Assembly: GCF_006345805.1 (NCBI RefSeq)
Contig: NC_043022.1
Coordinates: 10,292,001 to 10,356,000 of the forward strand
DNA length: 64,000 bases
Source: Octopus sinensis
Taxonomy: Eukaryota
Reading direction: 5' to 3'
Part shown: one piece after another, positions 3,055-64,000 of the stretch
Layout: the number at the start of each line of letters is the position of its first letter
How positions within the stretch are numbered: position 1 is the stretch's first letter
The notes under the pieces: generated by a model
Seen by the model: the letters and a program-made list of their open reading frames with translations, nothing else
The model's database searches: none
What the model was told of the DNA's origin: nothing
Position numbers and translations under genes: made by a program

Positions 3055-4517
3055 CTAAAATTGCTTGTACTATAAACACCATATCGATTATATCACGGTC
3101 CTCCTTAAGGCGGCTCTAGCATTCGGCCAGAAGGCCCTTTTCAAGATAAACAAATAACCGCCTTAATACCATTCAGGCGTTCGTGACCTTCAGTAGAATG
3201 TTCTCCTGGCGTTATATCGAGTAGCAGAGCACAGTGACCCTTGATACACAGAAGCGTGCACTTATAATCTTGTTAAGTTTCCATTGGAATAGCATCAGAT
3301 CTTGGGTCATTGCTTCTGGACAAAGCACCTATGATACTCAGGTTCTTATCCGCAATTAGAAAGGCCAGCAAGTGACAGGTGATTCCAGCTGATGCTATGC
3401 GGATTAATGCTTCTCATTGAGTGTGGAGAGGCGGATCAGGGCAGCGTCGAAACGCACATTTTCTATAGCGTCAGGTTATCCCATAACTTGAGAGCGAAAT
3501 TGGATTGACGGAAACTGAAAAGAAGCCTGTCATGTGAAGTGTACCACTAATTTTAAAAAGACTGTGCCGTCACGCACCGAATTACGTTGATTCTGCCTGA
3601 CAGTTGTGTCAAGGGCCACATGTCTGTGGAATCCTCATCCATCTGCATGTTAATTAAGGGGCAATAAGTTCAGTCGATCGATCCACTGCATCCGCCTCAT
3701 CGAACGCCGAGCACACATGCGCACACACGATCACACACACATACACACACACACGCACACACATAGACATGCACGCGTGCGCACGCACCCACTCACATAC
3801 ACAAGCGCGCGCACGCACACGCTTCCAGGCACTCACACTCGCACACGCACGCATACACACACACGTACACACACACGACATACACACACACGTACACACA
3901 CACGACATACACACAAGCGCGCACACCGCCCAGGCACTCACACTCGCGCGTGCATGCACACACACGCGCACACATATACACTCACACTCACACAAGGCAC
4001 ACACGCGCACACCACGTACTCACTCGCACACACGCACTCATACTCGCACACGCGCACACACATACGCGCACACACATACACGCACACACATACACGCTCA
4101 CACACACATACTCACACGAACATACACACATATGAAAGGTATATTCTCGTACATAACTGCATAGTGATTCTAGCATTGTACCAAGCGGCGTGTGTATGAC
4201 TAACGTCTGCATTAGTTCACAAATCAATAACCAGCACTCTAAGTTATTACATTGCATTGTTAACCGTGATAACTATGGAAACTGTTGAATAGAAATACTA
4301 TATATATAACGCGCAAACATAAACTGAAAGATCGCTTGGCGATACACAAGGCGTATTTAATAAAATTGCTTAGTTAAACTATTATAAAAGCGTGAAACTA
4401 TTAACAGCTCTTTCGGTTGTGTATTAAATTGATATTTATGTATCACTGGACGGTGTACCTTTTTGTTGTTGGTTCTGCGTTTGCACTCGCGTGCGCGTAC
4501 TCTTCTCCAGTTGCGTA

Positions 4518-4822
4518 CACATACATACATACATACATACATACATACACATATATATATACATACATACATGCATGCATACATACATACATACATACAT
4601 ACATACATACATACATACATACATACACATATATATATATATACATACATGCATGCATGCATACATACATACATACATACATACATACATACATACATAC
4701 ACATATATATATACATACATACATGCATGCATACATACATACATACATACATACATACAATACATACATACATACACATATATATATATATATCATACAT
4801 ACATGCATGCATACATACATAC

Positions 4823-4857
<35 letters not shown>

Positions 4858-5932
4858 CATACATACATGCATGCATATACATACTACATACATACATACA
4901 TACATACATACATACATACACATACATATATATATATATACATACATGCATGCATGCATACATACATACATACATACATACACATATATAATATATATAC
5001 ATACATGCATGCATGCATACATACATACATACATACATACATACATACATACATACACATATATATATACATACATACATGCATGCATACATACTACATA
5101 CATACATACATACACATACATACATACACATATATATATATTACATACATACATGCATCATGCAACATACTACATACATACATACATACATATACATACA
5201 TATATACATACATACATGCATGCATCATACATACATACATACATACCTACATACACCATACATACATACATACACATATATATATATATATACATACATG
5301 CATGCATGCATACATACATACATACATACATACACATATATATATATATACATACATGCATGCATGCATGCATACATACATACATACATACATACATACA
5401 CATATATATACATACATGCATGCATGCATGCATACATACATACATACATACATACATACATACATACACATATATATATACATACATACATGCATGCATA
5501 CATACATACATACATACATACATACTACACATATATATATATATACATACATGCATGCATGCATACATACATACATACATACTACATACATACACATATA
5601 TATATATACATACATGCATGCATGCATGCATACATACATACATACATACATACACATATATATATACATACATGCATGCATGCATGCATACATACATACA
5701 TACATACATACATACATACACATATATATATATACATACATGCATGCATGCATGCATACATACATACATACATACATACACATATATATACATACATACA
5801 TGCATGCATGCATACATACATACATACATACATACATACATACATACATACATACACATATATATATACATATATACATGCATGCATGCATACATACATA
5901 TATATATATACATACATACATGCATGCATGCA

Positions 5933-5968
<36 letters not shown>

Positions 5969-6689
5969 TATACATACATGCATGCATGCATACATACATA
6001 CATACATACACAATATATATACATACATACATGCATGCATGCATACATACATACATACATACATACACATATATATATACATACATACATGCATGCATGC
6101 ATACATACATACATACATACACATATATATATATATACATACATACATGCATGCATGCATACATACATACATACATACACATATATATATACATACATAC
6201 ATGCATGCATGCATACATACATACATACATACACATATATATATACATACATACATGCATGCATGCATACATACATACATACATACATACACATATATAT
6301 ATATACATACATACATGCATGCATGCATACATACATACATACATACATACATACACATATATATATATACATACATACATGCATGCATGCATGCATACAT
6401 ACATACATACATACACATATATATATACATACATACATGCATGCATGCATACATACATACATACATACATACATACACATATATATATACATACATACAT
6501 GCATGCATGCATACATACATACATACATACACATATATATATACATACATACATGCATGCATGCATACATACATACATACATACATACATACATACATAC
6601 ATACACATATATATATACATACATACATGCATGCATACATACATACATACATACATACACATATATATATACATACATGCATGCATGCA

Positions 6690-6723
<34 letters not shown>

Positions 6724-6771
6724 CACATATATATATACATACATACATGCATGCATGCATGCATACATACA

Positions 6772-6807
<36 letters not shown>

Positions 6808-6921
6808 CATACATACATACATACATGCATGCATGCATACATACATACATACATACATACACATATATATATATACATACATGCATGCATACATACATAC
6901 ATACATACATACATACATACA
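4518..6921. repeat. 2.4-kb compound satellite: (CATA)n-CA-(TA)n-(CATA)2-(CATG)n, higher-order unit about 50 bp
   Basis: Read directly. It is the source of the 400-890 aa spurious HTYI/MYVC ORFs. Confidence 0.97.
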
Positions 6922-7263
6922 TCTGAGACCTCCCTCGGTCATGACTGACCGTGGGATTGCACCTAGAAAGTTACCCTCCCAGGCACAAGTTCGGGCAAGG
7001 CTGTTTTTTATGGAAGACCAGCAGTCGTCCATGCATACCGGCCTCACCTCTCCACGCCACCAGTGTTATCCAAGGGAAAGGCAAAGGGGCCGATACAGCT
7101 TGGCACCTGTGACGTCGCAACTCAGTTCTACAGCTGAGTGAACTGGAGCAATGTGAAATAAAGTGTCTTGCTCAAGAATACAACACACAGCCTGGTCCGG
7201 GATTCGAACTCACAACCTCACGATCGTAAGCTCAATGCTCTAAACACTGAGCCATGCGCCTTC
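6922..7263 (-). mobile_element. tRNA-derived SINE family C, full length
   Basis: Minus-strand head GGCGCATGGCTCAGTG...GAGTTCGAATCCC (A and B boxes). Body shared with 7303, 15273 and 61960. Confidence 0.9.
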
Positions 7264-7739: not shown

Positions 7740-9047
7740 CATCGCACGCAATACCTTCGAGACTGTGAGTCAAAAACTTCATAACAGGAAAACATTCAGA
7801 AGAAATTCCATTGGCTGAGAGTGGTACAAAAAAATCTGACGTATCGTAGGTCCTTTATCGATATTTATTAGCAAGCTTTCAGTGGAGATATAAATACACC
7901 AAGCTGGTTGGAGACAGAAAGAAAACTGATACCCGAAAGCAAAGCTACTCATACAACAAAAAATTCTATTGTTCAGTAGCATACCAGGAACAATATTTAC
8001 ATTCTGTCTAAGTCAGCAAAAAAGCAGCCAAAAAAATGACATTCTAATGTCAAAGAAACTTGCAAATTCGCAAGGGAACTTGGTTTTAACCTTGAATTAC
8101 ACGAAGAACCTGAAACCACTGCCACCAAAAAAAGAAAACTGATCAAACAGACTACAAAAAAGAACGGGCAGAAACAAATTGAGGAGAGGTGGAGTATATA
8201 CTTCGAAGCCAAAATGCTGATGTAGACCAAGCAACAAGCTATCAGTGGCTGAGAAGCTCTGTACTGAAAGCAGGAACTGAAAGTTTCATATTAACGACAC
8301 AAGTTAAAAGCTTGCTAACCAAAATCTACCAGGCTAACGTTCTTCAAGACGGTTCTGACCCTAAATGCAGATTTGGCGATACATGTAACGAAGCAATATA
8401 CCATCTCGTCTCGGGATGTCCTGTACTGACACCAAATGAATACAAAAATTGTCACGATAGGGTAGAACAGTATTTACAATGGAAAATATGTAAATACTAC
8501 AAAATCAACACTCCTGCTTACTGGTATGACCTTCATCCTGAACCAGTCGGTGAAGGTAAAAATGTCACTATCGTCTGGGATTTTCCAGTCAACACCGACA
8601 GAACGATCCAGGCTAATCGACCAGACATAGTCATTAACGACGGGGAAGAAAATACTTATAAACTAATAGACGTAAGTGTTGTCACTGATCAAAATATATC
8701 TGTAAAGGAATTTGACAAATTAAGTAAATATAAGGACCTGGAAATTGAAATACAAAAGATGTGGCATCTTAAAGCAAGAACTGTTCCTGTTGTTGTGGAT
8801 GCCCTAGGTATGATAAAAAAAGGATGTCAAAATCATCTAGATTATATCCCAGGGGAAACATGTCTCAGAGAAATCCAGTTTAAATGTCTGTGTTGTATTA
8901 CATGAAGATATTTAGCTACTGGCTCTGCCACCTCCCCTCTCCAAACTTTTACTCATACTGTAACATCTCTTATCCTTCACTCGCCCTCTGACGCTGGGTG
9001 GGGTCGCAGCAGGTAAGTGTAACAAACATGCAGATTAAAATCAAATG

Positions 9048-17360: not shown

Positions 17361-17988
17361 TATGGAGTAATATGGACTATATTTTGAAATATATTTATAT
17401 GGATTGGGGGGAGGCACCAAAATCCTTTACCTCTTAATCCGGCTCTGGAGAGCAGCTACCACAGAACCTGGATTAACGTTACAGCCGTAAGAAATCTGAT
17501 TCTTTGCCGCGTAATGACACCCGTCTGTGTAATCTGTATTATTGGTGTTTGTTGAGAGCAAACCTGTTCACTTGGGCTATACTTGTCACTGCTACCGATC
17601 CATCAGAAAATTTACTGAGGGGGCAGCATCTTGCACTTCGCCATCACATTCTCCATAAAGTGGAACTTGCAGAAGTTGATGATGAAGGCTTGGTTTAATA
17701 GCAAAGTGTATGACCCCAGTCCTTTTAAGTTCATAAATCATACTATATCTCTCTCCATAGCTAACAGACAGAGGAAAACTCTTTGCCCTGACCGGTTGAA
17801 AGAGGGTGCGGAGGCGATCCTCACGATAAAGTTATTGTGTGTAGTAGGGGTCTTCAACCATCGAGCCACAGACAAGAATAGGGCGGCAAAGGAAGAATAG
17901 ACTTTGAAATTTTATTTCTATTCTATTGACTATCGCAGTCTGCGGGTCGATGATTTTTGTATTATATATGTAGCATGTATGAAATACA

Positions 17989-18610: not shown

Positions 18611-19962
18611 ATACATATAGGTGTTGCATCTGCTCGTGAAGAAGAACCTATATGTATTATATATGTAATAATTAATTTATATATTATGCACTTTATTGTG
18701 TTTTGTTATGCATGTGATCCCTCGGCCTGTGGCAAAATTGTCTTGCTTGAAACCAATTCATAACGCAAGAAAGTTTAGGGACATCTGGTGTGTACGACAG
18801 ATCCAGCTATCAGCCGAAATTATTCGATAAATTCGGCTGATTGCCGGATCCGTGCTAAACGAGACAACAACTGTTTAACATCACTTCACAAATAAACAAT
18901 GGTCGGACACTAAACAAACAAATGCAGAAAGATCTCGTCACTTTCCGAGCATATCAAACAAGTTTATATACCTGTACTGTTTATCCCCAACCGGCTATGT
19001 TTCCGTGTGGCACTGCCTGACCAGGAGTTTCTGCAAGTGTTCTATGGCTTCCGAGCTGAAAGTTCACCAAATTAAGGAAGAATAATTAGAAGAACGATTA
19101 TTTATTTTCTGGTTACATGTATTTTAACAAGAAATACATACTATACATGAAAATAATAATATTCACATACATATACATACATAGTACATCTATATTCATA
19201 TACAAATACACACACACACACTTTAATAAGAATACAAGTATACATACATGCACACATACGCATGTGAAAGCACACACACACACACACACCAACAAAGACG
19301 TAGAAATTTACGCATTTTCACTAACAAAGATGTCGTTCATTTTTTTTCTTTTTGAACTGAACCTGCGGACAGATGTGGAAACGCAAATAAGTTATAAATA
19401 TATATACACCTATTAACGAAAACACACACACACACACACACACAACACACACCACACACACACACATACATAATGCTTATTGTTGTATAGTCGCCCGAAA
19501 TTGTGCCCACCCCCTCCGGCCAAAAACAAAAAAGAGCGAGTGTAGAATAGTTGATATAAAATATACGTTAGAAAATCTACGTAAAAAGAAATCCCCCACC
19601 TCCATTATCAATCATTTACAACAGAAACGATACAGTCTTAGCTCGCCGTTACGTCCCTTACTTAGTCCTCTCCACACTGATAAGGTAATTAATTCTCCAA
19701 AAACAAACCCGTGCGTTGATCAAAGCAATGTGATGTCAGTAATGTCATTGAACAACTTAGCACATACACGATCGTAAGATCGTTTCGCTGTTTTTGTTGT
19801 TGCTTTGGTTGCTGTTGATGTAATTTCGCTGCTTTGGTTGATAAATAGTAACTTTGTTTGCTTGCTTTCTGCTGTCTTTAATGGTGTACATATCTTTCAA
19901 GAAACACTTGTCATTACATGCTACAGAAGTATTTGAGTATTTAAATTTTCATGCGTACGCAT

Positions 19963-20025
<63 letters not shown>

Positions 20026-20248
20026 ATACATACATACATACATACATACATACTACATACATAGGTGCATGCATGCATACATTGGTACATGATGTGTCCT
20101 TACATATATGTATGCATACATAAAACTTACACACATGCATACATACATACATACAGATATATTAGATACATATGAATAAACATAGATATATGCATAAAAT
20201 TCATATACGTATAGACATTCATGCACACATACACACACACACACACAC

Positions 20249-20313
<65 letters not shown>

Positions 20314-20483
20314 CGTACATACAAATATGCATACATATACATCCGTACAGATATACATACAGACATACATACCCACATACATGCACACACATACATACAT
20401 ACATACATACGTACATACATGATAGATCGATAGCCACTAAACCTTTTTTAAAATTTTCTCTCCCTGTTTATTTTCTCATGTTC

Positions 20484-20519
20484 CTTTCTGTTGAAGAGCG
20501 TAGGCTCGAAACGTAAAAG
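20484..20519 (+). ncRNA. Minimal hammerhead-like motif (Penelope-type, variant core)
   Basis: CUUU-CUGUUGAA-GAGC-guag-GCUC-GAAAC-GUA-AAAG. Core deviates from CUGANGA. Confidence 0.5.
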
Positions 20520-20544
20520 ACTTTCTTACTTCCCGAGCGTTAAA

Positions 20545-20767
20545 CTCTCTTTCTCTCTTTTTCTCTCTTTTACTTGTTTCAGTCATTTGACTGCGGCCAT
20601 GCTGGAGCACCGCCTTTAATCGAGCAACTCGACCCCGGGACTTATTCTTTGTAAGCCCAGTACTTATTCTATCGGTCTCTTTTTTGCCGAACCGCTAAGT
20701 GACGGGGACGTAAACACACCAGCATCGGTTGTCAAGCGATGCTAGGGGGACAAACACAGACACACAA

Positions 20768-20837
<70 letters not shown>

Positions 20838-21006
20838 TACGACAGCTTCTTTCAGTTTCCGTCTACCAAATCCATCCACTCACAAGGCATTGGTCGGCCC
20901 GGGGCTATAGCAGTAGACACTTGCCCAAGATGCCACGCAGTGGGACTGAACCCAGAACCATGTGGTTGGTTAGCAAGCTACTTACCACACAGCCACTCCT
21001 GCGCCT
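20545..21006 (-). mobile_element. SINE family A, full length
   Basis: Same consensus as 16297. Confidence 0.93.
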
Positions 21007-21575
21007 AATACATCTGTTTGTTGTTTACACACCCGTCTTCAATTTTTTTGTTTTTTTGTAAATCTCGCTACATACATACATACATACAGACAGACATAAA
21101 TTTTTCAATGTGTGTATACATACATACATATATACATACATACATATATACATACATACATATATACATACATTCATACATATATATATCCTCACAAACA
21201 TACATATAGACATAAATACATAAATTCTTACATGCACACATACATACATACATACATATGTGTGGGAGCAGTATGACCAAATGGTTAAGACGTTCGCTAG
21301 ACAATTACGAGGTTTCTGGTTCGATCCGTGTGCACAGCCTTGCATTGTGAGTGAATATGAATAGCCAGAAACCGCGCTGAAGCCCATCTATTGGATTGTT
21401 GTGGTAATTCAAAAGATAGTCTTTTACCCACTTTCTGCTACAGTGCCTCAGGATTACGTTATCGTTACACGAGTCTGCTCAACCACGTACACATCAATTC
21501 AGGAGTAGATTATTTCGTTCATTGAACGACCGAGATCCGCCATGCTTACTCGCGCGCAGCGCACTCTCGCACACA

Positions 21576-21943: not shown

Positions 21944-22119
21944 ACATTCGAGATACATATATAAGTTTATGTGTTCGATTACCAGCGGTGCGTTGTGTCT
22001 CTGTACATCCTTGATTCAGATGTATATGTGCGCGCACACGTGCTTCTATCTATATGTGTACTTGTATATGTGTGTGTGTGTGTGTGTGTGTGCGAGTCTG
22101 TGTATGTGTTTGTGAGTCA

Positions 22120-33975: not shown

Positions 33976-34307
33976 TAGGAGACCCACCTAAATAAATACA
34001 ATGTATTTTCTCTCACGACTTCCGATTCTGTACCCTTCACAGCAGCAGCAGCAACAACTATCCTTTCTTTGTACGCCCAATACAAAACGAGACATGTAAA
34101 AAAAAGATTTAGATGTAGGTGTGTGTGTGTATTAGGTGACAGAGTACGACATGAAAAGCCCTCCAATTCAATACAGGCATTTCCTTTGTTAGTTACCATC
34201 AGGGTTTGAACTGGTGCACAACGTGTCCTCTTGCTATTGAAACTTTTATCATACTGTAAAATGTATGAAGTATTTTGGCTGCCGCACCCTGTGCGCGCGA
34301 CCGTGGT

Positions 34308-34370
<63 letters not shown>

Positions 34371-34466
34371 TGTGTGTGTATATATATATATGTATGTATG
34401 TATGTGTGTGTATATATATGTATGTATGTATGTGTGTGTATATATATATATGTATGTATGTATGTG

Positions 34467-34497
<31 letters not shown>

Positions 34498-34646
34498 GTG
34501 TATATATATGTATGTATGTGTATATATATGTATGTATGTATGTGTATATATATGTATGTATGTATCTGTGTATACACACACACATATATGTTTACGAGTG
34601 AATGAAGAAACGACAGAAGTTACAAGTATGGATCAAAACAGTTTTA

Positions 34647-34709
<63 letters not shown>

Positions 34710-35256
34710 GGTGCAGGAGTCGTTGTGTGGTAATATGCTTGCTTCCCAACCACATGGTTCCAATTCAGTCTCACTACGTAGCATCTTCTTCAATGGGCTC
34801 GGATCGACCAAAGCCTTGTGAATGGATACGGTAGAGGTAAACTGAAAAAGGTATGCAAAGAATCGATCAAATCACAGTAAGATCCCTGCCTGGTGCGTGG
34901 CTATCGACAAAAACCGTGGCTAATGTTATGATGTAACCTAACCGTCATTCAGAAAACCCAGGAATTGTAATGGTGGAGAGTATGTATAAAAATTGATCAG
35001 AAAAGGAAAGTGAAGTGAGAGAATATATATTTATGTATTTATGACGCTTATCTAACAAACACAGATTACGAAACAGCTGTCAACTCATTCTGTAATAGAC
35101 ATCTGTTCTCTCCCTTCACTTCTTTTATCAGGTTAATTTATATATATGTGTGTATGCGCGTGAGTGTATGAGAGAGAGAGGGAGAAAGAGAGTGTGTGCG
35201 TGTGTGTATGAGAGAGAGATAGTGTATGTGTGTGCCTGTCTGTCTGTATACATACT

Positions 35257-42934: not shown

Positions 42935-43225
42935 ACAAGACCAGTAATTTTGGGGCGAGTGGAAGTCTATTTCCGTCGACATCAGTGTGCAACTGGTATT
43001 TATTTTATCGACCTCGAACTGATGAATGGCTGCATCGACCTCGGCGGAATTTGAACTCAGGACGGAAAGACGGACGGAATGCTGCTAAGCATTTTGTCCA
43101 GCGCGCTGTTGGTTCTGCCAGCTCACCGCCTCGACAGCGATCACGATAATCCTTTCTACTATAGGCAGATGGCATGAAATTTTGTGGGAGGGGGTCTAGT
43201 CGATTACATCGATCCCCAGTGTTCA
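42935..43225 (-). mobile_element. SINE-B copy plus a second B 3' fragment
   Basis: cctcggcggaatttgaactcagg...ctgccagctcaccgcc. Confidence 0.8.
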
Positions 43226-43910
43226 ACACACACACACACATACAAACATACACAAAAACACACTCAAACGCGCGCACGCAGATGCACACACGCAAACACA
43301 CATTTACACAAAAACATATACATAAACGCGCACACACAAGTATGCCCACAAATACACACACACACACGCATAAACACACAAACGCCCACAGAAGCGCCCG
43401 CACATACACACAAACATTCACAAACATACACATACACACAAGTGCGCGCACACACACACACACTCACAGACATACACACGCACGCATACACCCAAACATC
43501 CACATACAAAACGTGGCTTCCAATTACACTGAAACAATTCGTATATTATATAGCAAGGAGGCTTAAACTCATTACGAAGATGAAATGGCTAAGGTCAGAA
43601 AATAACAAAGTTCAGTGAAACGAGAAGCTTAACGGATCTCAGTACTAAAAGTGACAACATTGAACTGAAAGCTCCAGGCCGTAACTCTTAGAGACGTCGA
43701 CCGAAAGGCGGGACAAATATATTTAAGATGATAAAAGTGAGTTTAATGCTTGAAGCGTTTCAAATATAAAGAAGAATCTAAAGTAAGATCAAATATACGG
43801 TAAAAAAAAAAAATGAAATAAAAATACAATTAAATAAAATTAAAATATTTCTTTTGGGGATTTGGTTTGCAAGATTCTTTATATGAGTTTGTGTGTTGAA
43901 GCATATTCTG

Positions 43911-44416
43911 TTGTGTCTGGGGAGAGTCATTCTCTTTTTGTGCCTTATAATGTAACACACTCACCGGTTAAATTTCCACAAACATGGTACATAGTTGCAT
44001 AACACACACACACACACACACCAGGAGACAGAGGTGCATACATATACAAACACACGCTCACACACACACACACATACATAGAAAATACACAAACACGGAC
44101 ATGCAAGCACATAAATATACAGGATACATACATACCGATGCACACACACACATATATACATACACATGCATACATACACACATACATACGTACATGCATG
44201 CATAGGCACAGACACACACACACTGACCCACACACATGCGCACAAACAAACAAAAAGGAACGCAGTGTAAATAACGGACAGAGTCAATACTATTGAAGAG
44301 GTTGCAAGACGCAACGAAAATTTTAGGGAAATAAAAATAAGAAATAAGTGGAAATTTTACCGGTGAGTGTGTTACATTATAAGGCACAAAAAGAAAATGA
44401 CTCTCCCCAGACACAA
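43911..44416. repeat. 69-bp inverted repeats enclosing a hammerhead-like motif
   Basis: 43911-43979 is the reverse complement of 44348-44416 with few mismatches. Confidence 0.88.
44290..44326 (+). ncRNA. Minimal hammerhead-like motif (U3 variant)
   Basis: CUA-UUGAAGA-G-GUUGC-aagac-GCAAC-GAAA-AUUU-UAG. Confidence 0.55.
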
Positions 44417-57720: not shown

Positions 57721-58412
57721 ACGTTCAATAATAAATACTGCAGTTGATTAATTCAACTGAAATTCTTCAAGGTGGTGCTCCAGCATGGCCACAGTCTAGT
57801 GACTGAAACATGTAATGGATATGTAGGAATAAATTCAAATATGAATTACGAGCAATGCTAGTGTTGTAAATATTGTCAAATACACTTTCTCTCTTTTACT
57901 TGTTTCAGTCATTTGACTGCGGCCATGCTGGAGCACCACCTTTGTAAGCCCAGTACTTATTCCTATGTATCCTTTACATGTTTCAGTCACTAGACTGTGG
58001 CCATGCTGGAGCACCACCTTGAGGAATTTCAGTTGAATTAATCAACTGCAGTATTTATTATTGAACGTTGCTTACCAACCACATGGTAATAAGTACTTAT
58101 AAATGACAATGGTAGTGTTTGAGCAAGGTGCTTGGAATTATAGTTAAAACAACACAACAAATAAAGGTTTTAAAGTTTGCTTTTTATTTCAGTGTTAATC
58201 TCTGTTTGATAATCTACTGCATGAATTAAAATAAAATATATCTTAAGAAGTTGATGAGCATGACTTTGGCTCTGGCAACATTATAATTTCCTGGTTCCAA
58301 ATGAGTCAGGTACAACAACAAAAAAATTAGGGGTACAAAAGTTGCAATTGACTGCTACACTTTATTCAAATGCCTAAATGAAAGATGGTACATCTTGAAT
58401 GAACTTGTCAGA

Positions 58413-59006: not shown

Positions 59007-59212
59007 TTAGCTTTTGAGTGAAAATAGATATTTAATTGCTTGAAAACACTCTGCTTCTTCTAGAGCATCTCTCAGAATACGAAATTTGCTTCCCTTTGAA
59101 TTACAACTCTTAAACCACTTCTTTAACATTCGGTAACTCTGTTCTTCCGGATCACTAGGAAAGTTATTCTCAATTGCTGCCAGTTCATCTATTTCAATTT
59201 TTAAGAAAATCC
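59007..59212 (-). CDS. Terminal coding exon, remainder of the Death domain
   Basis: Acceptor cttttacag|GG, phase 1: (G)IFLKIEIDELAAIENNFPSDPEEQSYRMLKKWFKSCNSKGSKFRILRDALEEAECFQAIKYLFSLKS*. The EQ.Y.ML.KW and L..AL motifs are death-domain-like. In frame with the previous exon. Confidence 0.9.
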
Positions 59213-59779
59213 CTGTAAAAGATGCATGGAAAAGAAACTGTTACAACAACAACAACAACCAACATTAATGCAGCAAGACAGCAGTCCCCAACTTTTTTTG
59301 CCCAACGGACAGATTTCAGGCAAGACAGTTTTCCCACAACCCCAGGGATCACATGCATTACAAAACACAAAGTACATTAAATACAATTTAATTATTACAT
59401 ACTAGCATTATGACCCATCTTTGCCGGGTCATAGTGCTAGTGCATGTATATATGTGTACATATTACATGTACATCTATATATATACATCTACACATAAAA
59501 TACAAAATACAAAGTTATATCTTGATATCGCTAGTGATAACAATACTGAAAATATAACAGACTGGAATTGTATGACTATTCCATTTCTGCACGCTAATTT
59601 TATTTTTAATTTATTCCCATTCATGTGAAACCACTTATTCAAGTTCAAATCCTTGATGCAATTTTATACCAATTTCTATTTTTACTTTTGTTATGATACA
59701 ATTGTATTAAACTTTAGTTTGATTTTAATTATTACTTACTACATATAATTCAATTGTTATTATTATCTCTAATTTTTAT

Positions 59780-60027
59780 TGTTAAAGTGAAAGTATCTGA
59801 CATAAAATAGAGAAATGTTTTTGTTTCACTTTTAACATGTAATACTGAAATAGTGGAGAAGATATGATATTGCTGTGGGCTCGCCCTAGGCAAGAAGTTG
59901 AACATTTTTTTTTGCCCATGAAACTACATGGCATGTATAAAATTTGAATGAAATTGGTTGTGTAGTTCTCAAGTTTTAGGGAAACACACAGACAGACAGA
60001 CACTTTCTCAGTTATATATATAGAGAG
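59780..60027 (-). mobile_element. Helitron-like 5' part
   Basis: Minus strand TCTCTATATATATAACTGAGAAAGTGTCTGTCTGTCTGTGTG..CAACCAATTTCATTCAAATTTTATAC, a TC start plus microsatellite layout typical of non-autonomous Helitrons. Confidence 0.55.
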
Positions 60028-60106
60028 ATAAAGTACATACATATCTTATACATATATAATACACATATGCATATATAACTTATTTAATGCATATATATCA
60101 TGTATA

Positions 60107-61520
60107 TGAGGGCCGACTGAAATGCTCAGAGGCTGATCAAGATACACTCCTGGTATATGACCAAATGAGGTTTATTTTTCGTGGCCTATGCCAGGGGTGT
60201 AACCAGCCCACTTATGCGTACCTTTCCTTCATTGGACACTAAACTCTGCTTGCAAAGACCTGTTGAGGCAAGTGAAATCAAAATCGAAATCAAATTCGAT
60301 GACTGGCATCCGTGCTAGTGGAGTGTTAAGAGCACCATCTGAGCATGATCATTGCCAGAGCGGCTAACTAGCTTCTGTACCGGTGGCACATAAAAAGCAC
60401 CATTTGAGCATGATCGTTACCAGCGTCACCTTACTGGCACGTAAAAAAACATTCAAATGAGGTCGTTGCCAGTTCCGCTGGACTGGCTCCTGGGCAGGTG
60501 GCATATAAAAAACACCATTTGAGCGTGGTCATTGTCAGTACCGCCTGACTGGCACATAAAAGCACCCACTACATTCTCGGAGTGGTTGGCATTAGGAAGG
60601 GCATCCAGCTGTAGAAACTCTGCCAGATCAAGATTGGAGCCTGGTGCAGCCATCTGGTTCGCCAGTCCTCAGTCAAACCATCTAACCCATACTAGCATGG
60701 AAAGCAGACGTTAAACAATGATGATGATGATGAGTCCCTCTTGCTGTCCATACACTTCTTCCATCGGTGTTGCAGCACTTGGATGCCATTGATGAAGAAG
60801 CTTTTGTCTTGTTGCCCAAAAAAGTCATCAACAGCAGATATGAAGTCATTATCACTGTGATATTGGTTCCCAGCCAAGTGTCTTTTTTTTTTCAAGTTGG
60901 GGAACAGATGATAGTCAGATGGAGCCAAATCAGGAGAACAGCAAGGGTGATTAACCATTTCAAGCCACAGCCATACACAGCAGCCATTGAAACCAAGTAC
61001 TTGTGTGCTGTAGCATTGTCCAGATGAGACAAGATCCCTTTCATCAGTTTTCCTGGCAATTTGGTCTTGGTAGCCTTTCATAACTGTCTCAGCAAGTTGA
61101 TATAGTACACTCCATTGATGGCATGGCCCTTTTGAAGGTAGTCAATAAACACAATGCCTTTTACATCCCCAAAACTGAGAGCATCCCCTTCTTCCCGCAG
61201 ATGAGTCAACCTTGGCTTTCTTTGAAGCAAGTGAGGCGGGGTGTTTCCACTTCATGGATTGTCACTTTGTCTCTGGCTCAAAATAATTAGGAGATGTTCA
61301 AGGAAACCAGCTGGATCTGCCTCAAACAATGTCAGTTTTTCCCATGATGTGATCAGCCTGATGCACTTTTGATCAGGTTTCATATGTGGCACCCATCGAG
61401 TAGAAACCTCCACCATACCAAGTTCATTGTGCAGAATACTCTAAACTCGCTCACAGGATATGCTCATAGCATTGGCTATTTGCTTTATAGTGAATTGCCT
61501 GTCATCCATCTCCATGTGGG
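60107..61520 (-). mobile_element. Mariner transposon relic in intron
   Basis: TA|TGAGGG..AAA end at 60107. Transposase motifs HPCCSPDLAPSDYHLFPNLKK..RWKKC, RWVPH, GIVFIDYLQKG, with frameshifts and stops. Confidence 0.9.
60181..60733 (+). mobile_element. SINE with internal about 45-60-bp repeats and (GAT)n tail, nested in the mariner
   Basis: Repeated ggcacataaaaagcaccatttgagc. 3' GGCATTAGGAAGGGCATCCAGCTGTAGAAAC resembles the Meta domain as I recall it. Tail GTTAAACAATGATGATG. Confidence 0.8.
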
Positions 61521-61601
61521 GAACGCAATCAATGCTTTTCAAAAGCCTGCTTAAATGTAAAATTTATAGAAATAAGCAGTGTGTTGTAATTTTATACTTA
61601 C

Positions 61602-61673
61602 CAACTTGCTGCCATTTATTTGGTAATACTTTTGCTATCTTTTGCAAGTCCCTTTTCTCCAGTTTGTGAGAAT
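61602..61673 (-). CDS. Exon encoding the N-terminal part of the Death domain (same gene)
   Basis: Acceptor tttttgcag|AT and donor GTTG|gtaagt. 72 nt, phase 1 to 1: (D)SHKLEKRDLQKIAKVLPNKWQQV(G), matching the death-fold L..IA..L...W..VG pattern. Confidence 0.88.
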
Positions 61674-61859
61674 CTGCAAAAATATTTCAAAATCTTTCAC
61701 ATTATATTGGTTTCAAATTTTGGCACAAGGCCAGCAATTTTGGAGGAGGGTGTAAGTCAATTACATCAACACCAGCATTTGTAAAAAACAAGGCTTTCGT
61801 GTCAGCCTAGGGCTACAGTGGAATTCACTTGCTTAAAATGCACTGTGTTTGATGAGGGT

Positions 61860-62505
61860 TCCAGTTGATTCGTTCGCCAGAACAGCATGTACCCTTCATG
61901 TTGCTCTCTAGGAGATTCAGCACAGGAGGAGGAGACTCCCTTTGGTCATAAATAACCATGAGATTGCACCTTAAAAAGTTACCCTCCGAGGCACAATTTA
62001 GAGCAAGGTTGTTTATGGAAGACCAGCAGTCACCCATGCATACCGGCCTCCCCTCTCCACACCACTGATGTTATCCAAGGGAAAGGCAAAGGAGCCAATA
62101 CAGCTTCGCAACTCATTTCTACAGCTGACTTAACTGGAGCAACGTTAAATAAAGTGTCTTGCTCAAGAACACAACATGCAGCCAGGTCCAGGATTCAAGC
62201 TCACAACCTCACGATCGTAAGCTCAATGCTCTAACCACTGAGCCATGCACCTTCATGTAATATAGTATAATATAATATATTTACAAGGCAGCAAACAGGT
62301 AGAATGGTTAGCATGCCAGGCAAAATGCTTAGCAGCATTTCGTCTGTCTTTATGTTCTGAGTTCAAATTCTGCCATTGTTGACTTTGACTTTCATCCTTT
62401 TGTGGTCAATAAAATAAATACCAGTAGAGTATTTGGGGGATGGGGTCGATCTAATCGACCCATCTCTTCCCTGAAATTGCTGACCTTGAACCAAAACTTG
62501 AAAGC
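61860..62505. mobile_element. SINE-C (minus, 61960-62254) with F-tail piece, and SINE-B (plus, 62283-62505)
   Basis: Consensus matches. Confidence 0.8.
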
Positions 62506-62552
62506 AATATAATGTTTAACATACGTGTGCTGATGAAAGACCAGAGGCTGCA

Positions 62553-62655
62553 GTCCTCCAGTTTTACTAAGCCCTGTAAAAGAATTCAGAAGGTTGGGCC
62601 TTCAACCAGGCCTTTCGCAATATCCTTAAAATCAGGAACATTTCAGCACCCCTTC

Positions 62656-62702
<47 letters not shown>

Positions 62703-62890
62703 CACACACATACAGGCAGATCAGATAATTATGATTTTATTCAACATACTCCTCTCTCAGATTCACATACTTATTGCAGCAGTCCTTTGGGTTTTCTAAG
62801 CCCTGTAAAAGAACTCAGAAGTTTGGGTCCCCAGCCAGTCCTTTCGCAATGCCCTTAAAGCCAGGACGTTTTCAGCACCCCCTCATATAA
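62553..62890. mobile_element. Two mariner-derived MITE fragments in the same orientation
   Basis: Both end ttcagcacccc(c)tcat|TA (TIR-like). The minus strand of 62722-62800 encodes a decayed mariner C-terminus (GLENPKDCCNKYVNLR.EYVE*). Confidence 0.75.
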
Positions 62891-63044
62891 TCAGAAGAAC
62901 AACAGCCTATACACTAGGCCACATACCTTCACCTGACTATAAATCATGAAAAGACAGGGTAGTCACATCTGGAAAATCTATCTTCATAATTTTGCCAGAT
63001 TATGACAAAACTGGAACTAAAACACAACACAAACCACATTATTT

Positions 63045-63480
63045 CATACTGCGACTGTGTGGTTAAGAACCTTGTATCCCAACCATATGGTCTTGGGTTC
63101 CATCTCACTACACTGCATTTTAAGCAAGTGAATTCCACTGTAGCCCTAGGCTGACACCAAAGCCTTGTGTGTTGATTTGGTAGATGGAAACTGAAAGAAG
63201 CCTATCAAGCATGTGTGTGTATATCTGTATGAGTATGTCTTTATTTTTCTATTTCGCCCTCACCATCACTTGACAACTGGTCTTGGTTTGTTTGCATCCC
63301 TGTAACTTAGCAGTTCAGTTGAAAGAAGACTAATAGAATAAGTATTAAGCTTAGAAGGCAAGCATTGTGGTCAATTTGTTCAACCAAGCCCTTCAAAGTG
63401 GTACCCAAGCATGTGGTACCCAAGTATGTGGTACCCAAGCATGTGGTACCCAGTCCAATGAAAGAAACAAGTAAAAAACA
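63045..63480 (+). mobile_element. SINE-A, old copy, with a 15-bp tandem (GTGGTACCCAAGCAT) x3.5 at 63398-63451
   Basis: Diverged A layout. Confidence 0.8.
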
Positions 63481-63551
63481 AAACCAATGCAAAAGATGTA
63501 CCATTCAGTCGACGACCCACACAGACGAGAGATCATCAAATATTTCCTTAC

Positions 63552-63697
63552 CGAATCCATTTTTGGTTGTTACTGGTTGTCGACACTGGGGACACTTTCT
63601 CAGTCTAATTTTAGAGCATTCCCTACATGTTCTTTTGTGTCCACATGGAAGGAATTTCACAGTGACCTGGTTATCTCCACACAGCACACATTTATCC
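63552..63697 (-). CDS. Exon encoding a RING-HC (C3HC4, MIB/IAP-like) finger of a RING+Death-domain protein
   Basis: Acceptor ttacag|G and donor TTCG|gtaagg. 146 nt, open: DKCVLCGDNQVTVKFLPCGHKRTCRECSKIRLRKCPQCRQPVTTKNGF, with C-x2-C...PCGH...C-x2-C...CP-x-CR spacing. Ends in phase 1. Confidence 0.92.
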
Positions 63698-64000
63698 CTG
63701 TAATAGCGTAACAGAGAATAAAATAGAATATAAAAACACAGTCTACCAACGACATGAATTCAAACCAAAAATGACATTGTGTATAAGTTTTACAGTGAAT
63801 ATTAAAATGTTAAAGGGGAAAAATTATACTGGTGTTTTTGTATTAAAGACTACAGAAATATATTTATGATACCACAATATCTATGTATATATCTGTCTGT
63901 CCATCCATCACCTAGATCTATTTATCTATCTTTCTGTCTATCTATCTATCTATCTATCTATCTATATATCTTTCTGTATCTATCTATCTTTCTGTCTATC

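What the first reader, a model, noticed from the sequence alone, without database searches (positions are those of the whole stretch)
59007..63697. RING-HC finger fused directly to a C-terminal Death domain
Seen: three phase-compatible exons splice to ...CVLC...PCGH..C..C...CPQC...GF-D-SHKLEKRDLQKIAKVLPNKWQQVGIFLKI...EQSYRMLKKW...LRDALE*. The supplied ORF track misses the Death exons entirely. Known: this RING subtype occurs in Mind bomb and IAP E3 ligases, and Death domains nucleate immune and apoptotic signalling complexes; canonical MIB1/2 and IAPs do not end in a Death domain. Inference: a lineage-specific E3 ligase adaptor, possibly an ankyrin/MIB-derived family member, coupling death-fold signalling to ubiquitination.
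Basis: partly seen in the sequence, partly recalled or inferred. Interest (0 to 1): 0.72.

Follow-up and report, generated by a model that had tools for sequence, protein, structure and literature searches.

The report
Octopus RING–Death domain ligase gene end
The window holds the last three exons of an octopus gene that joins a ubiquitin-ligase RING finger to a Death domain; the reading is correct, but the gene is one divergent member of an octopus-only family that is already in public databases under misleading automatic names and has never been studied.

Summary
Three minus-strand exons (63697-63552, 61673-61602, 59212-59007) have canonical AG/GT splice sites and compatible phases. They join into a 140-residue open C-terminal peptide. 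It passes Pfam's cut-offs for zf-C3HC4_3 (45 bits) and Death (33.7 bits). It keeps all eight zinc ligands, and the model shows a RING followed by a six-helix death-domain bundle.

This is the 3' end of a gene whose start lies beyond position 64000. About 27 protein clusters in a 1.84-billion-protein library share the RING-then-Death order. Every one whose source was looked up is from Octopus bimaculoides, O. sinensis or O. vulgaris. The full-length members are ankyrin repeats, one RING, a variable linker and a Death domain, with no Mind bomb N-terminal modules and no BIR domain. Intron positions are conserved in O. sinensis and O. vulgaris loci.

The window copy is divergent, at most 49% identical to any relative, and is absent from the protein collections.

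The likely function is inferred, not shown: an E3 ligase docked onto death-domain signalling assemblies. No paper found describes the family. Interest is moderate.

The parts
63552..63697 (-). RING exon (146 nt). It begins with the last base of a codon split with an unseen upstream exon. It encodes DKCVLCGDNQVTVKFLPCGHKRTCRECSKIRLRKCPQCRQPVTTKNGF plus the first base of the next codon.
   Evidence: CAG acceptor and GTAAGG donor. Pfam zf-C3HC4_3, 45 bits. All eight Zn ligands present. Best solved-structure matches by sequence are cIAP1, cIAP2 and XIAP RINGs, E 2e-7 to 1e-6. The intron just upstream of the first Cys codon lies within two codons of its position in O. sinensis L002 and O. vulgaris L003.
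61674..63551 (-). Intron 1 (1878 nt), full of interspersed repeats. It contains a 64-nt inverted repeat pair (61783-61846 and 63110-63173), a (TA)n tract flanked by a 114-nt direct repeat, and a short tandem repeat GGGTACCACAT(G/A)CTT.
   Evidence: Repeats are shared with O. sinensis loci at 70-86% identity. A motif search found no linker-cassette exon of the kind seen in paralogs, but that is a weak test.
61602..61673 (-). Death-domain exon A (72 nt, 24 codons, in-frame if skipped). It encodes (D)SHKLEKRDLQKIAKVLPNKWQQV(G), which is helix 1 and the start of helix 2.
   Evidence: CAG acceptor and GTAAGT donor. The model has helices at residues 55-63 and 69-75. An equivalent exon sits at the same position in L001 and L002, and it is exactly 72 nt in L003. 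Some RefSeq/ENA models of paralogs lack it: P0169, P0012, P0019, P0020, P0173, P0174.
59213..61601 (-). Intron 2 (2389 nt). It contains a decayed mariner-type transposase remnant (about 61540-60760, minus strand, several stops) and other repeats.
   Evidence: Pfam Transposase_1 scores 25.3 bits against a cut-off of 24 on ORF 61078-61230.
59007..59212 (-). Death-domain exon B and the stop codon (TAA at 59009-59007). It encodes (G)IFLKIEIDELAAIENNFPSDPEEQSYRMLKKWFKSCNSKGSKFRILRDALEEAECFQAIKYLFSLKS*.
   Evidence: CAG acceptor. It carries the rest of the Death HMM match. The model has helices at 80-89, 94-108, 115-125 and 129-137. tblastn with 64 family proteins hits here, best E 6e-16.
58361..58366 (-). 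First AATAAA downstream of the stop codon (about 640 nt into the presumed 3' UTR). This is a candidate polyadenylation signal only.
   Evidence: Pattern match only. There is no transcript evidence.

Best explanation
The region is the 3' end (last three coding exons) of an intact, divergent member of an Octopus-restricted, multi-copy gene family. Full-length family members consist of N-terminal ankyrin repeats, one MIB/IAP-type C3HC4 RING, an optional linker built from small cassette exons, and a C-terminal Death domain split over two exons. Shown here: the exons, the two domains, the fold, the family architecture, its restriction to Octopus in the databases searched, and the conserved intron positions. 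Inferred: (1) the RING recruits a ubiquitin-charged E2 and acts as an E3 ligase; (2) the Death domain docks the protein by homotypic death-domain assembly onto other death-domain proteins, and clustering there would bring RINGs together and switch them on; (3) the ankyrin repeats, encoded beyond position 64000 for this gene, select substrates. The protein would then ubiquitinate components of death-domain signalling complexes, a job done in vertebrates by cIAP1/2 and MIB2, which lack a Death domain and reach TNF receptor complex I in other ways. Skipping the in-frame 72-nt exon A would give isoforms with a broken Death domain.
For: Canonical splice sites and an open joined frame. Both Pfam domains score above their curated cut-offs. 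All Zn ligands are kept, as are the family-invariant Death-domain residues L65, W69, L76, Q97, L102, W105, L119, A122, C128, A131 and L135, even though identity to any relative is at most 49%. That pattern argues for purifying selection rather than decay. The model has pLDDT 86 with a RING and a six-helix bundle, and Foldseek hits death domains and IAP/IDOL RINGs. 27 of the best 150 library hits have the RING-then-Death order. Full-length ones are Ank + zf-C3HC4_3 + Death without MIB_HERC2, ZZ, SH3_15 or BIR. All sources looked up are Octopus. The same exon plan occurs in O. sinensis and O. vulgaris loci. The best non-family RING hits are true MIB1/MIB2 proteins. A full-length paralog is collinear with the ANK-RING half of a tunicate MIB2. 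From the literature: the last RING of MIB1 dimerises and carries the ligase activity (bioRxiv 10.1101/2024.03.01.582834), and MIB2 binds and ubiquitinates RIPK1 and cFLIP in TNF signalling (PMC7815719).
Against: The upstream exons of this gene could not be retrieved, so the ankyrin part and even a start codon are unseen for this copy. This exact protein is absent from the 15-billion-protein collection, so it is unannotated or unexpressed in the assemblies held there. No transcript data were available. No ligase or binding assay exists for any family member, and no paper on the family was found. The Death domain cannot be assigned to a partner subfamily: the PDB sequence matches to PIDD, RIPK1 and ankyrin-3 are all weak, E 0.03-0.35.
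Confidence: 0.72

Rival explanations
1. It is a truncated or silent duplicate: a 3' fragment of a family gene, copied without its ankyrin exons or no longer transcribed, whose reading frame happens still to be open.
For: The protein is absent from the protein collections although three annotated Octopus genomes are represented there. It sits on a long branch of the family tree. No other family exon lies in the remaining 59 kb of the window. The introns are packed with transposon debris. The 5' part is unseen.
Against: There are 140 codons with no stop or frameshift in AT-rich DNA. All three splice-site pairs are intact. All eight Zn ligands and all family-invariant Death-domain residues are kept despite more than 50% divergence, which is not what neutral decay gives. 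Repeat-rich introns are normal for these loci.
Confidence: 0.15
2. The RING exon and the Death exons are mostly used in separate products. For example, a Death-only protein could come from an internal promoter and an ANK-RING protein could end elsewhere, so the fused RING-Death protein would be a minor form or an artefact of reading the exons together.
For: Octopus databases contain Death-only models with the same Death subfamily: P0168, P0018 and P0021. They also contain an ANK-RING model with no Death hit, P0066. Several models skip Death exon A.
Against: Neither Death exon begins with or is preceded by an in-frame start codon in the window. The phases of all three exons match. 27 independent clusters, including RefSeq models from three species, join RING and Death in one protein with the same junction residues.
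Confidence: 0.08
3. It is the end of a mollusc-type IAP (BIR-containing) gene, because the RING is most similar to cIAP and XIAP RINGs among solved structures and mollusc IAPs with Death domains are known.
For: The top PDB sequence hits are cIAP1, cIAP2 and XIAP RINGs. Oyster IAPs with BIR-DD-RING architecture are described (PMC8917759).
Against: In those IAPs the death-fold domain precedes the RING; here it follows. No relative that shares the RING-then-Death order has a BIR domain; the full-length ones have ankyrin repeats. In the large library the best RING-only hits are Mind bomb proteins.
Confidence: 0.03

Closest known systems
Mind bomb E3 ligases (MIB1, MIB2)
   Same: Ankyrin repeats are followed by C-terminal RING(s) of the zf-C3HC4_3 type. 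The best RING hits outside the family are MIB proteins of sponge, tunicate and rotifer. A paralog is collinear with the ANK-RING half of MIB2. MIB2 acts on death-domain signalling components RIPK1 and cFLIP.
   Different: Full-length paralogs have no MIB/HERC2, ZZ or SH3_15 (REP) substrate-binding modules. The family has one RING instead of two or three, and it adds a C-terminal Death domain that no MIB has. The RefSeq names 'MIB2-like' and 'MIB1-like' reflect ANK+RING similarity only.
cIAP1/cIAP2 (BIR-CARD-RING) and mollusc BIR-DD-RING IAPs
   Same: The RING belongs to the same Pfam subfamily, and cIAP1 is the top solved-structure match. A death-fold domain and a RING sit in one polypeptide. 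Oyster IAPs carry a true DD.
   Different: The substrate-binding part is ankyrin repeats, not BIR. The domain order is reversed, RING then DD, so the RING is not at the C-terminus. That matters because IAP RING dimers use their free C-terminal tail (general knowledge, not tested here).
Ankyrin-repeat plus Death-domain proteins (ankyrins 1-3, ANKDD1A/B)
   Same: Ankyrin repeats lie at the N-terminus and a Death domain at the C-terminus. Ankyrin-G and ankyrin-1 DDs are among the best fold matches.
   Different: Those proteins have no RING. Ankyrins have ZU5-UPA modules before the DD, and none were found in the paralogs.
Death-domain adaptors PIDD, RIPK1, FADD, TRADD
   Same: The same six-helix fold, with TM-score 0.7-0.83 on the target, plus weak sequence matches to PIDD and RIPK1 DDs.
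   Different: Sequence identity is only 15-24%, so no orthology can be claimed. None of them carries a RING.

Membership tests
RING finger, zf-C3HC4_3 subtype (PF13920) | HMM score above the curated cut-off | tested here: met
   45 bits against a cut-off of 27, E 9.5e-12, residues 2-44.
RING finger, zf-C3HC4_3 subtype (PF13920) | Eight zinc ligands in C3HC4 order and spacing | tested here: met
   C3, C6, C18, H20, C24, C27, C35 and C38 are present. Seven are invariant across the family alignment, and the eighth is missing only in a truncated model.
RING finger, zf-C3HC4_3 subtype (PF13920) | E2 binding and ubiquitin-ligase activity | not testable with these tools
   This needs an in vitro ubiquitination assay.
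Death domain (PF00531) | HMM score above the curated cut-off | tested here: met
   33.7 bits against a cut-off of 22.6, E 3.9e-08, residues 57-131.
Death domain (PF00531) | Six-helix bundle fold | tested here: met
   The AF2 model has six helices with pLDDT mostly 80-97. Foldseek's top hits are FADD, ankyrin-G, PIDD, RAIDD, RIPK1, TRADD and TNFR1 DDs.
Death domain (PF00531) | Homotypic DD-DD assembly | not testable with these tools
   This needs binding or oligomerisation experiments.
Octopus ANK-RING-DD family (unnamed; RefSeq 'MIB2-like', 'PSMD10-like') | RING directly followed by the DD, with introns after the ...GF codon and within the WQQVG motif | tested here: met
   The alignment is contiguous across both junctions. 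The same intron positions occur in L001, L002 and L003.
Octopus ANK-RING-DD family (unnamed; RefSeq 'MIB2-like', 'PSMD10-like') | N-terminal ankyrin repeats | not testable with these tools
   The upstream exons lie beyond window position 64000. Three attempts to fetch the contig failed. The repeats are present in the full-length paralogs.
Mind bomb (MIB1/MIB2) | N-terminal MIB/HERC2, ZZ and SH3_15 (REP) modules | tested here: not met
   They are absent from all full-length paralogs scanned and present in the true MIBs scanned alongside. For the window gene itself the N-terminus is unseen.
Mind bomb (MIB1/MIB2) | Two or three C-terminal RINGs, the last at the C-terminus | tested here: not met
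   There is a single RING, followed by a Death domain.
IAP (BIRC) family | At least one BIR domain | tested here: not met
   No BIR hit was found in any paralog with the RING-then-DD order. The window's own N-terminus is unseen.

The most novel reading that the evidence does not exclude
The octopus ANK-RING-DD genes form a lineage-specific, clustered and rapidly diversifying set of death-domain-docked ubiquitin ligases. They would serve as an octopus-invented signalling layer for innate immunity or cell death. Specificity would be diversified by gene duplication and by combinatorial use of small in-frame exons (linker cassettes of 51-78 nt and a skippable 72-nt Death exon). They would pair with receptors carrying the same Death-domain subfamily, such as the LRR adhesion GPCR with a C-terminal Death domain seen in O. 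bimaculoides (P0028).
Probability: 0.2. Interest if true: 0.65.

Novelty: new variant of a known kind. Interest (0 to 1): 0.4.

Why it matters
Death domains and RING ligases work together in animal immune and cell-death signalling, but normally on separate proteins or, in cIAPs, with a CARD placed before the RING. A family that attaches a Death domain directly behind a Mind bomb-type ANK-RING ligase would be a natural experiment in recruiting a ligase to death-domain assemblies. It would also add to the short list of octopus-specific gene expansions. On the practical side, dozens of octopus database entries named 'MIB2', 'MIB1-like' or '26S proteasome non-ATPase regulatory subunit 10' are not orthologs of those proteins. 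At least one family member, this one, is missing from current protein sets.

Tried and rejected
1. A word-indexed search with the 140-aa peptide found nothing. The exhaustive HMMER search was needed.
2. Three exact look-ups of window ORFs failed to fetch the source contig or the upstream exons. Look-ups of two homologs also failed because only the longest isoform is on record.
3. tblastn with the peptide and with about 195 fetched proteins found no second family copy or ankyrin exon in the window.
4. A motif search of intron 1 for linker-cassette exons like those of the paralogs found none, but the test is weak.
5. An apparent second pair of Death exons 'in L001' was an artefact: the file held both L001 and L002, and the hits belong to L002. 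No tandem claim is made from it.
6. ARAGORN found no tRNA in the tRNA-like SINE sequence of intron 1.
7. Comparing a full-length paralog with solved structures returned only generic ankyrin-repeat proteins and says nothing about origin.
8. The IAP hypothesis was rejected on domain order and the absence of BIR.
9. Four literature searches found no description of an ANK-RING-DD family.
10. The species could not be named. Repeat identity to O. sinensis loci has the same distribution as between two O. sinensis loci, which points to Octopus or a very close relative.
Full report
**What is in the sequence**

Three exons lie on the minus strand exactly where the finding places them: 63697-63552 (146 nt), 61673-61602 (72 nt) and 59212-59007 (206 nt, ending in TAA). 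Each is preceded by a pyrimidine-rich tract ending in CAG. The first two are followed by GTAAGG and GTAAGT. Exon 1 starts with the last base of a codon whose first two bases must come from an upstream exon. It ends after the first base of a codon that exon 2 completes to Asp. Exon 2 ends after one base of a codon that exon 3 completes to Gly.

The joined frame is open for 140 codons:

DKCVLCGDNQVTVKFLPCGHKRTCRECSKIRLRKCPQCRQPVTTKNGF/DSHKLEKRDLQKIAKVLPNKWQQV/GIFLKIEIDELAAIENNFPSDPEEQSYRMLKKWFKSCNSKGSKFRILRDALEEAECFQAIKYLFSLKS*

Within the RING exon there is no in-frame ATG. The first start-like codon after the upstream stop is a GTG that lies after the first zinc-binding Cys. The window therefore contains only the 3' end of the gene, and its 5' end lies beyond position 64000.

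**Domain identity**

- Pfam gives zf-C3HC4_3 at 45 bits (cut-off 27) for residues 2-44, and Death at 33.7 bits (cut-off 22.6) for residues 57-131.
- All eight RING zinc ligands are present.
- Among solved structures, the RING matches cIAP1, cIAP2 and XIAP best by sequence (E 2e-7 to 1e-6). The Death part matches PIDD, RIPK1 and ankyrin-3 death domains only weakly (E 0.03-0.35).
- An AlphaFold2 model built on a 14-sequence family alignment has mean pLDDT 86. It shows the short RING strands, a low-confidence hinge at residues 45-47, and six helices at 55-63, 69-75, 80-89, 94-108, 115-125 and 129-137.
- Foldseek against the PDB returns death domains for the C-terminal half: FADD, ankyrin-G, PIDD, RAIDD, RIPK1, TRADD and TNFR1, with TM-score 0.7-0.83 on the target. 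It returns XIAP, cIAP and IDOL RINGs for the N-terminal part.

Both halves of the observation are real.

**Relatives**

The word-indexed search with the peptide found nothing. The exhaustive HMMER search of 1.84 billion representative proteins found 249 hits at E <= 0.001 and 28 at E <= 1e-10, the best at only 46% identity.

I re-scanned the best 150 hits separately with the RING half and the Death half. 27 of them have a RING followed by a Death domain. I looked up the source of 19 of these, and a profile search returned a further 22 proteins. All are from Octopus bimaculoides, O. sinensis or O. vulgaris.

Their database names are automatic and inconsistent:
- "E3 ubiquitin-protein ligase MIB2" or "MIB1-like"
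- "26S proteasome non-ATPase regulatory subunit 10-like"
- "ankyrin repeat RF_0381"
- "uncharacterized"
- "Death domain-containing protein" (UniProt)

The full-length members scanned (369-563 aa) consist of several ankyrin repeats, one zf-C3HC4_3 RING and a C-terminal Death domain. Many also have a repetitive linker between RING and Death. None has MIB_HERC2, ZZ, SH3_15 or BIR. In two of them (P0008, P0014) the Death domain shows only in the family-based scan, not at the Pfam threshold used.

The best RING-only hits outside the family are genuine Mind bomb proteins from a sponge, a tunicate and a rotifer. Two of these were confirmed to carry the MIB N-terminal modules. A full-length paralog aligns collinearly with the ANK-RING half of tunicate MIB2, although ankyrin similarity is generic.

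Several family members share the same multi-megabase scaffolds and have near-consecutive accession numbers. This suggests genomic clustering. I did not verify adjacency directly.

**Gene structure is conserved**

In two O. sinensis loci (L001, L002) and one O. vulgaris locus (L003), family proteins map to the same exon plan:
1. A pre-RING exon.
2. A RING exon that begins one or two codons before the first Cys and ends right after a hydrophobic residue ten positions past the last Cys.
3. Zero to three small linker cassette exons.
4. Death exon A (72 nt in L003).
5. Death exon B, running to the stop codon.

The cassette is 51 nt in L001. In L003 there are three 78-81-nt copies about 2.1 kb apart, which looks like tandem duplication of an exon together with its intron.

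RefSeq isoforms of O. sinensis LOC115230672 differ by inclusion of the cassette and by skipping of exon A (P0163, P0164, P0169). Other models also lack exon A. Exon A is 72 nt in the window too, so skipping it keeps the frame. It would remove helix 1 and half of helix 2 of the Death domain. The window gene has no detectable cassette exon in intron 1, although that test was weak.

**Status of this copy**

- No other family exon occurs in the remaining 59 kb of the window.
- The window's Death domain is at most 49% identical to any family member and sits on a long branch in a rough neighbour-joining tree.
- The protein is not in the 15-billion-sequence collection.
- Interspersed repeats in the window match O. 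sinensis loci with the same identity distribution (median 83%) as two O. sinensis loci match each other (median 82%). The window therefore comes from Octopus or a very close relative, and this gene is apparently unannotated there.
- Despite the divergence, every splice site, every zinc ligand and every family-invariant Death-domain residue is intact. I take this as evidence of purifying selection, and I rate the pseudogene reading at about 0.15.

**How it probably works (inference)**

The RING is of the MIB/IAP type. In MIB1 the last RING dimerises and alone carries the ligase activity. Human MIB2 (MIB/ZZ modules, nine ankyrin repeats, two RINGs) binds and ubiquitinates RIPK1 and cFLIP and is recruited to TNF receptor complex I.

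The octopus proteins keep the ANK-RING half and replace the MIB substrate-binding N-terminus with nothing. Instead they gain a Death domain at the other end. The simplest mechanism has three steps:
1. The Death domain docks the protein onto oligomeric death-domain assemblies.
2. This clusters the RINGs and so activates them.
3. The ankyrin repeats choose substrates.

The hydrophobic or aromatic residue that ends the RING exon (F48 here) lies about where the functionally important C-terminal-tail Phe of IAP RINGs lies. That is a lead only and was not tested.

Octopus proteins with other architectures carry closely related Death domains. Examples are an LRR adhesion GPCR (P0028, also noted in PMC6408891), a "RIPK1-like" Death-only protein (P0031) and a "PIDD-like" protein (P0018). 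They are candidate partners.

**Comparison with known systems and novelty**

A death-fold domain and a RING on one protein is known from cIAP1/2 (with a CARD) and from oyster BIR-DD-RING IAPs. Those have BIR domains and the opposite domain order. Ankyrins and ANKDD1 combine ankyrin repeats with a Death domain but lack a RING.

This family fails the membership tests for both Mind bomb and IAP. Four full-text searches found no paper describing an ANK-RING-DD family. The proteins themselves have been in RefSeq and UniProt for years, however, and domain shuffling of death domains is a well-known theme in molluscs.

I rate the finding as a new variant of a known kind. The window gene is a new and divergent member. 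Interest is moderate at 0.4.

Noticed in passing
window 60760-61540 (minus strand), inside intron 2: A decayed mariner/Tc1-type transposase: several consecutive ORF fragments broken by stops. One fragment hits Pfam Transposase_1 at 25.3 bits against a cut-off of 24.
   Followed up: partly
window 61783-61846 and 63110-63173, inside intron 1: A 64-nt inverted repeat pair, 94% complementary and 1263 nt apart. It could be the ends of a foldback or MITE-like element, or two SINE copies in opposite orientation. In pre-mRNA it could form a long hairpin looping out most of intron 1.
   Followed up: partly
window 62190-62260 (minus strand), intron 1: A tRNA-like sequence (GGTGCATGGCTCAGTGGTTAGAGC...GGTTGTGAGCTTGAATCCTGGACC) that looks like the head of a tRNA-derived SINE. 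ARAGORN calls no tRNA there. Neighbouring repeat pieces recur in O. sinensis loci at 75-86% identity.
   Followed up: partly
window 62547-62660 and 62776-62889; 63395-63450: A 114-nt direct repeat (81% identity) flanks a (TA)n tract, and about four tandem copies of GGGTACCACAT(G/A)CTT lie nearby. Both are in intron 1.
   Followed up: no
window 4400-7100, and many shorter tracts (e.g. 700-1200, 3650-4200, 20050-21400, 34000-34800, 43000-44400): Very long imperfect microsatellite arrays of the (TATG/CATA/TGTA) kind produce spurious ORFs of up to 892 aa reading YIHT/CMYV repeats in both strands. There is a strong GC-skew excursion at 4-8 kb and a GC trough (0.25-0.30) at 44-52 kb.
   Followed up: no
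window 8189-8905 (+): A 238-aa ORF with normal amino-acid composition and no Pfam hit. It is possibly the tail of a retroelement polyprotein. No other convincing host gene was seen in the 59 kb downstream of the RING-Death gene.
   Followed up: partly
L003 (O. vulgaris CATOCA020000001.1) 17764-17844, 19833-19913, 21953-22033: Three near-identical 78-81-nt linker cassette exons of a family paralog, spaced about 2.1 kb apart. This indicates tandem duplication of exon-plus-intron units, which generates the repetitive RING-to-Death linkers seen in many family proteins.
   Followed up: partly
proteins P0028/P0155 (O. bimaculoides LOC106882527) and P0010: An LRR adhesion GPCR (LRR, GPS, 7tm_2) ends in a Death domain of the same subfamily, about 37% identical to the window's. 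One gene model (P0010) runs RING-Death-LRR-Death and is probably a read-through of neighbouring genes. Together these hint that LRR/Death receptor genes lie next to RING-Death genes.
   Followed up: no
database names of family members: Family members are named MIB2, MIB1-like, 26S proteasome non-ATPase regulatory subunit 10-like, ankyrin-1-like, PP6 regulatory ankyrin repeat subunit B-like, or RIPK1/PIDD1-like for the Death-only relatives. None of these names passes a domain-content check, so they are likely to mislead orthology-based analyses.
   Followed up: yes
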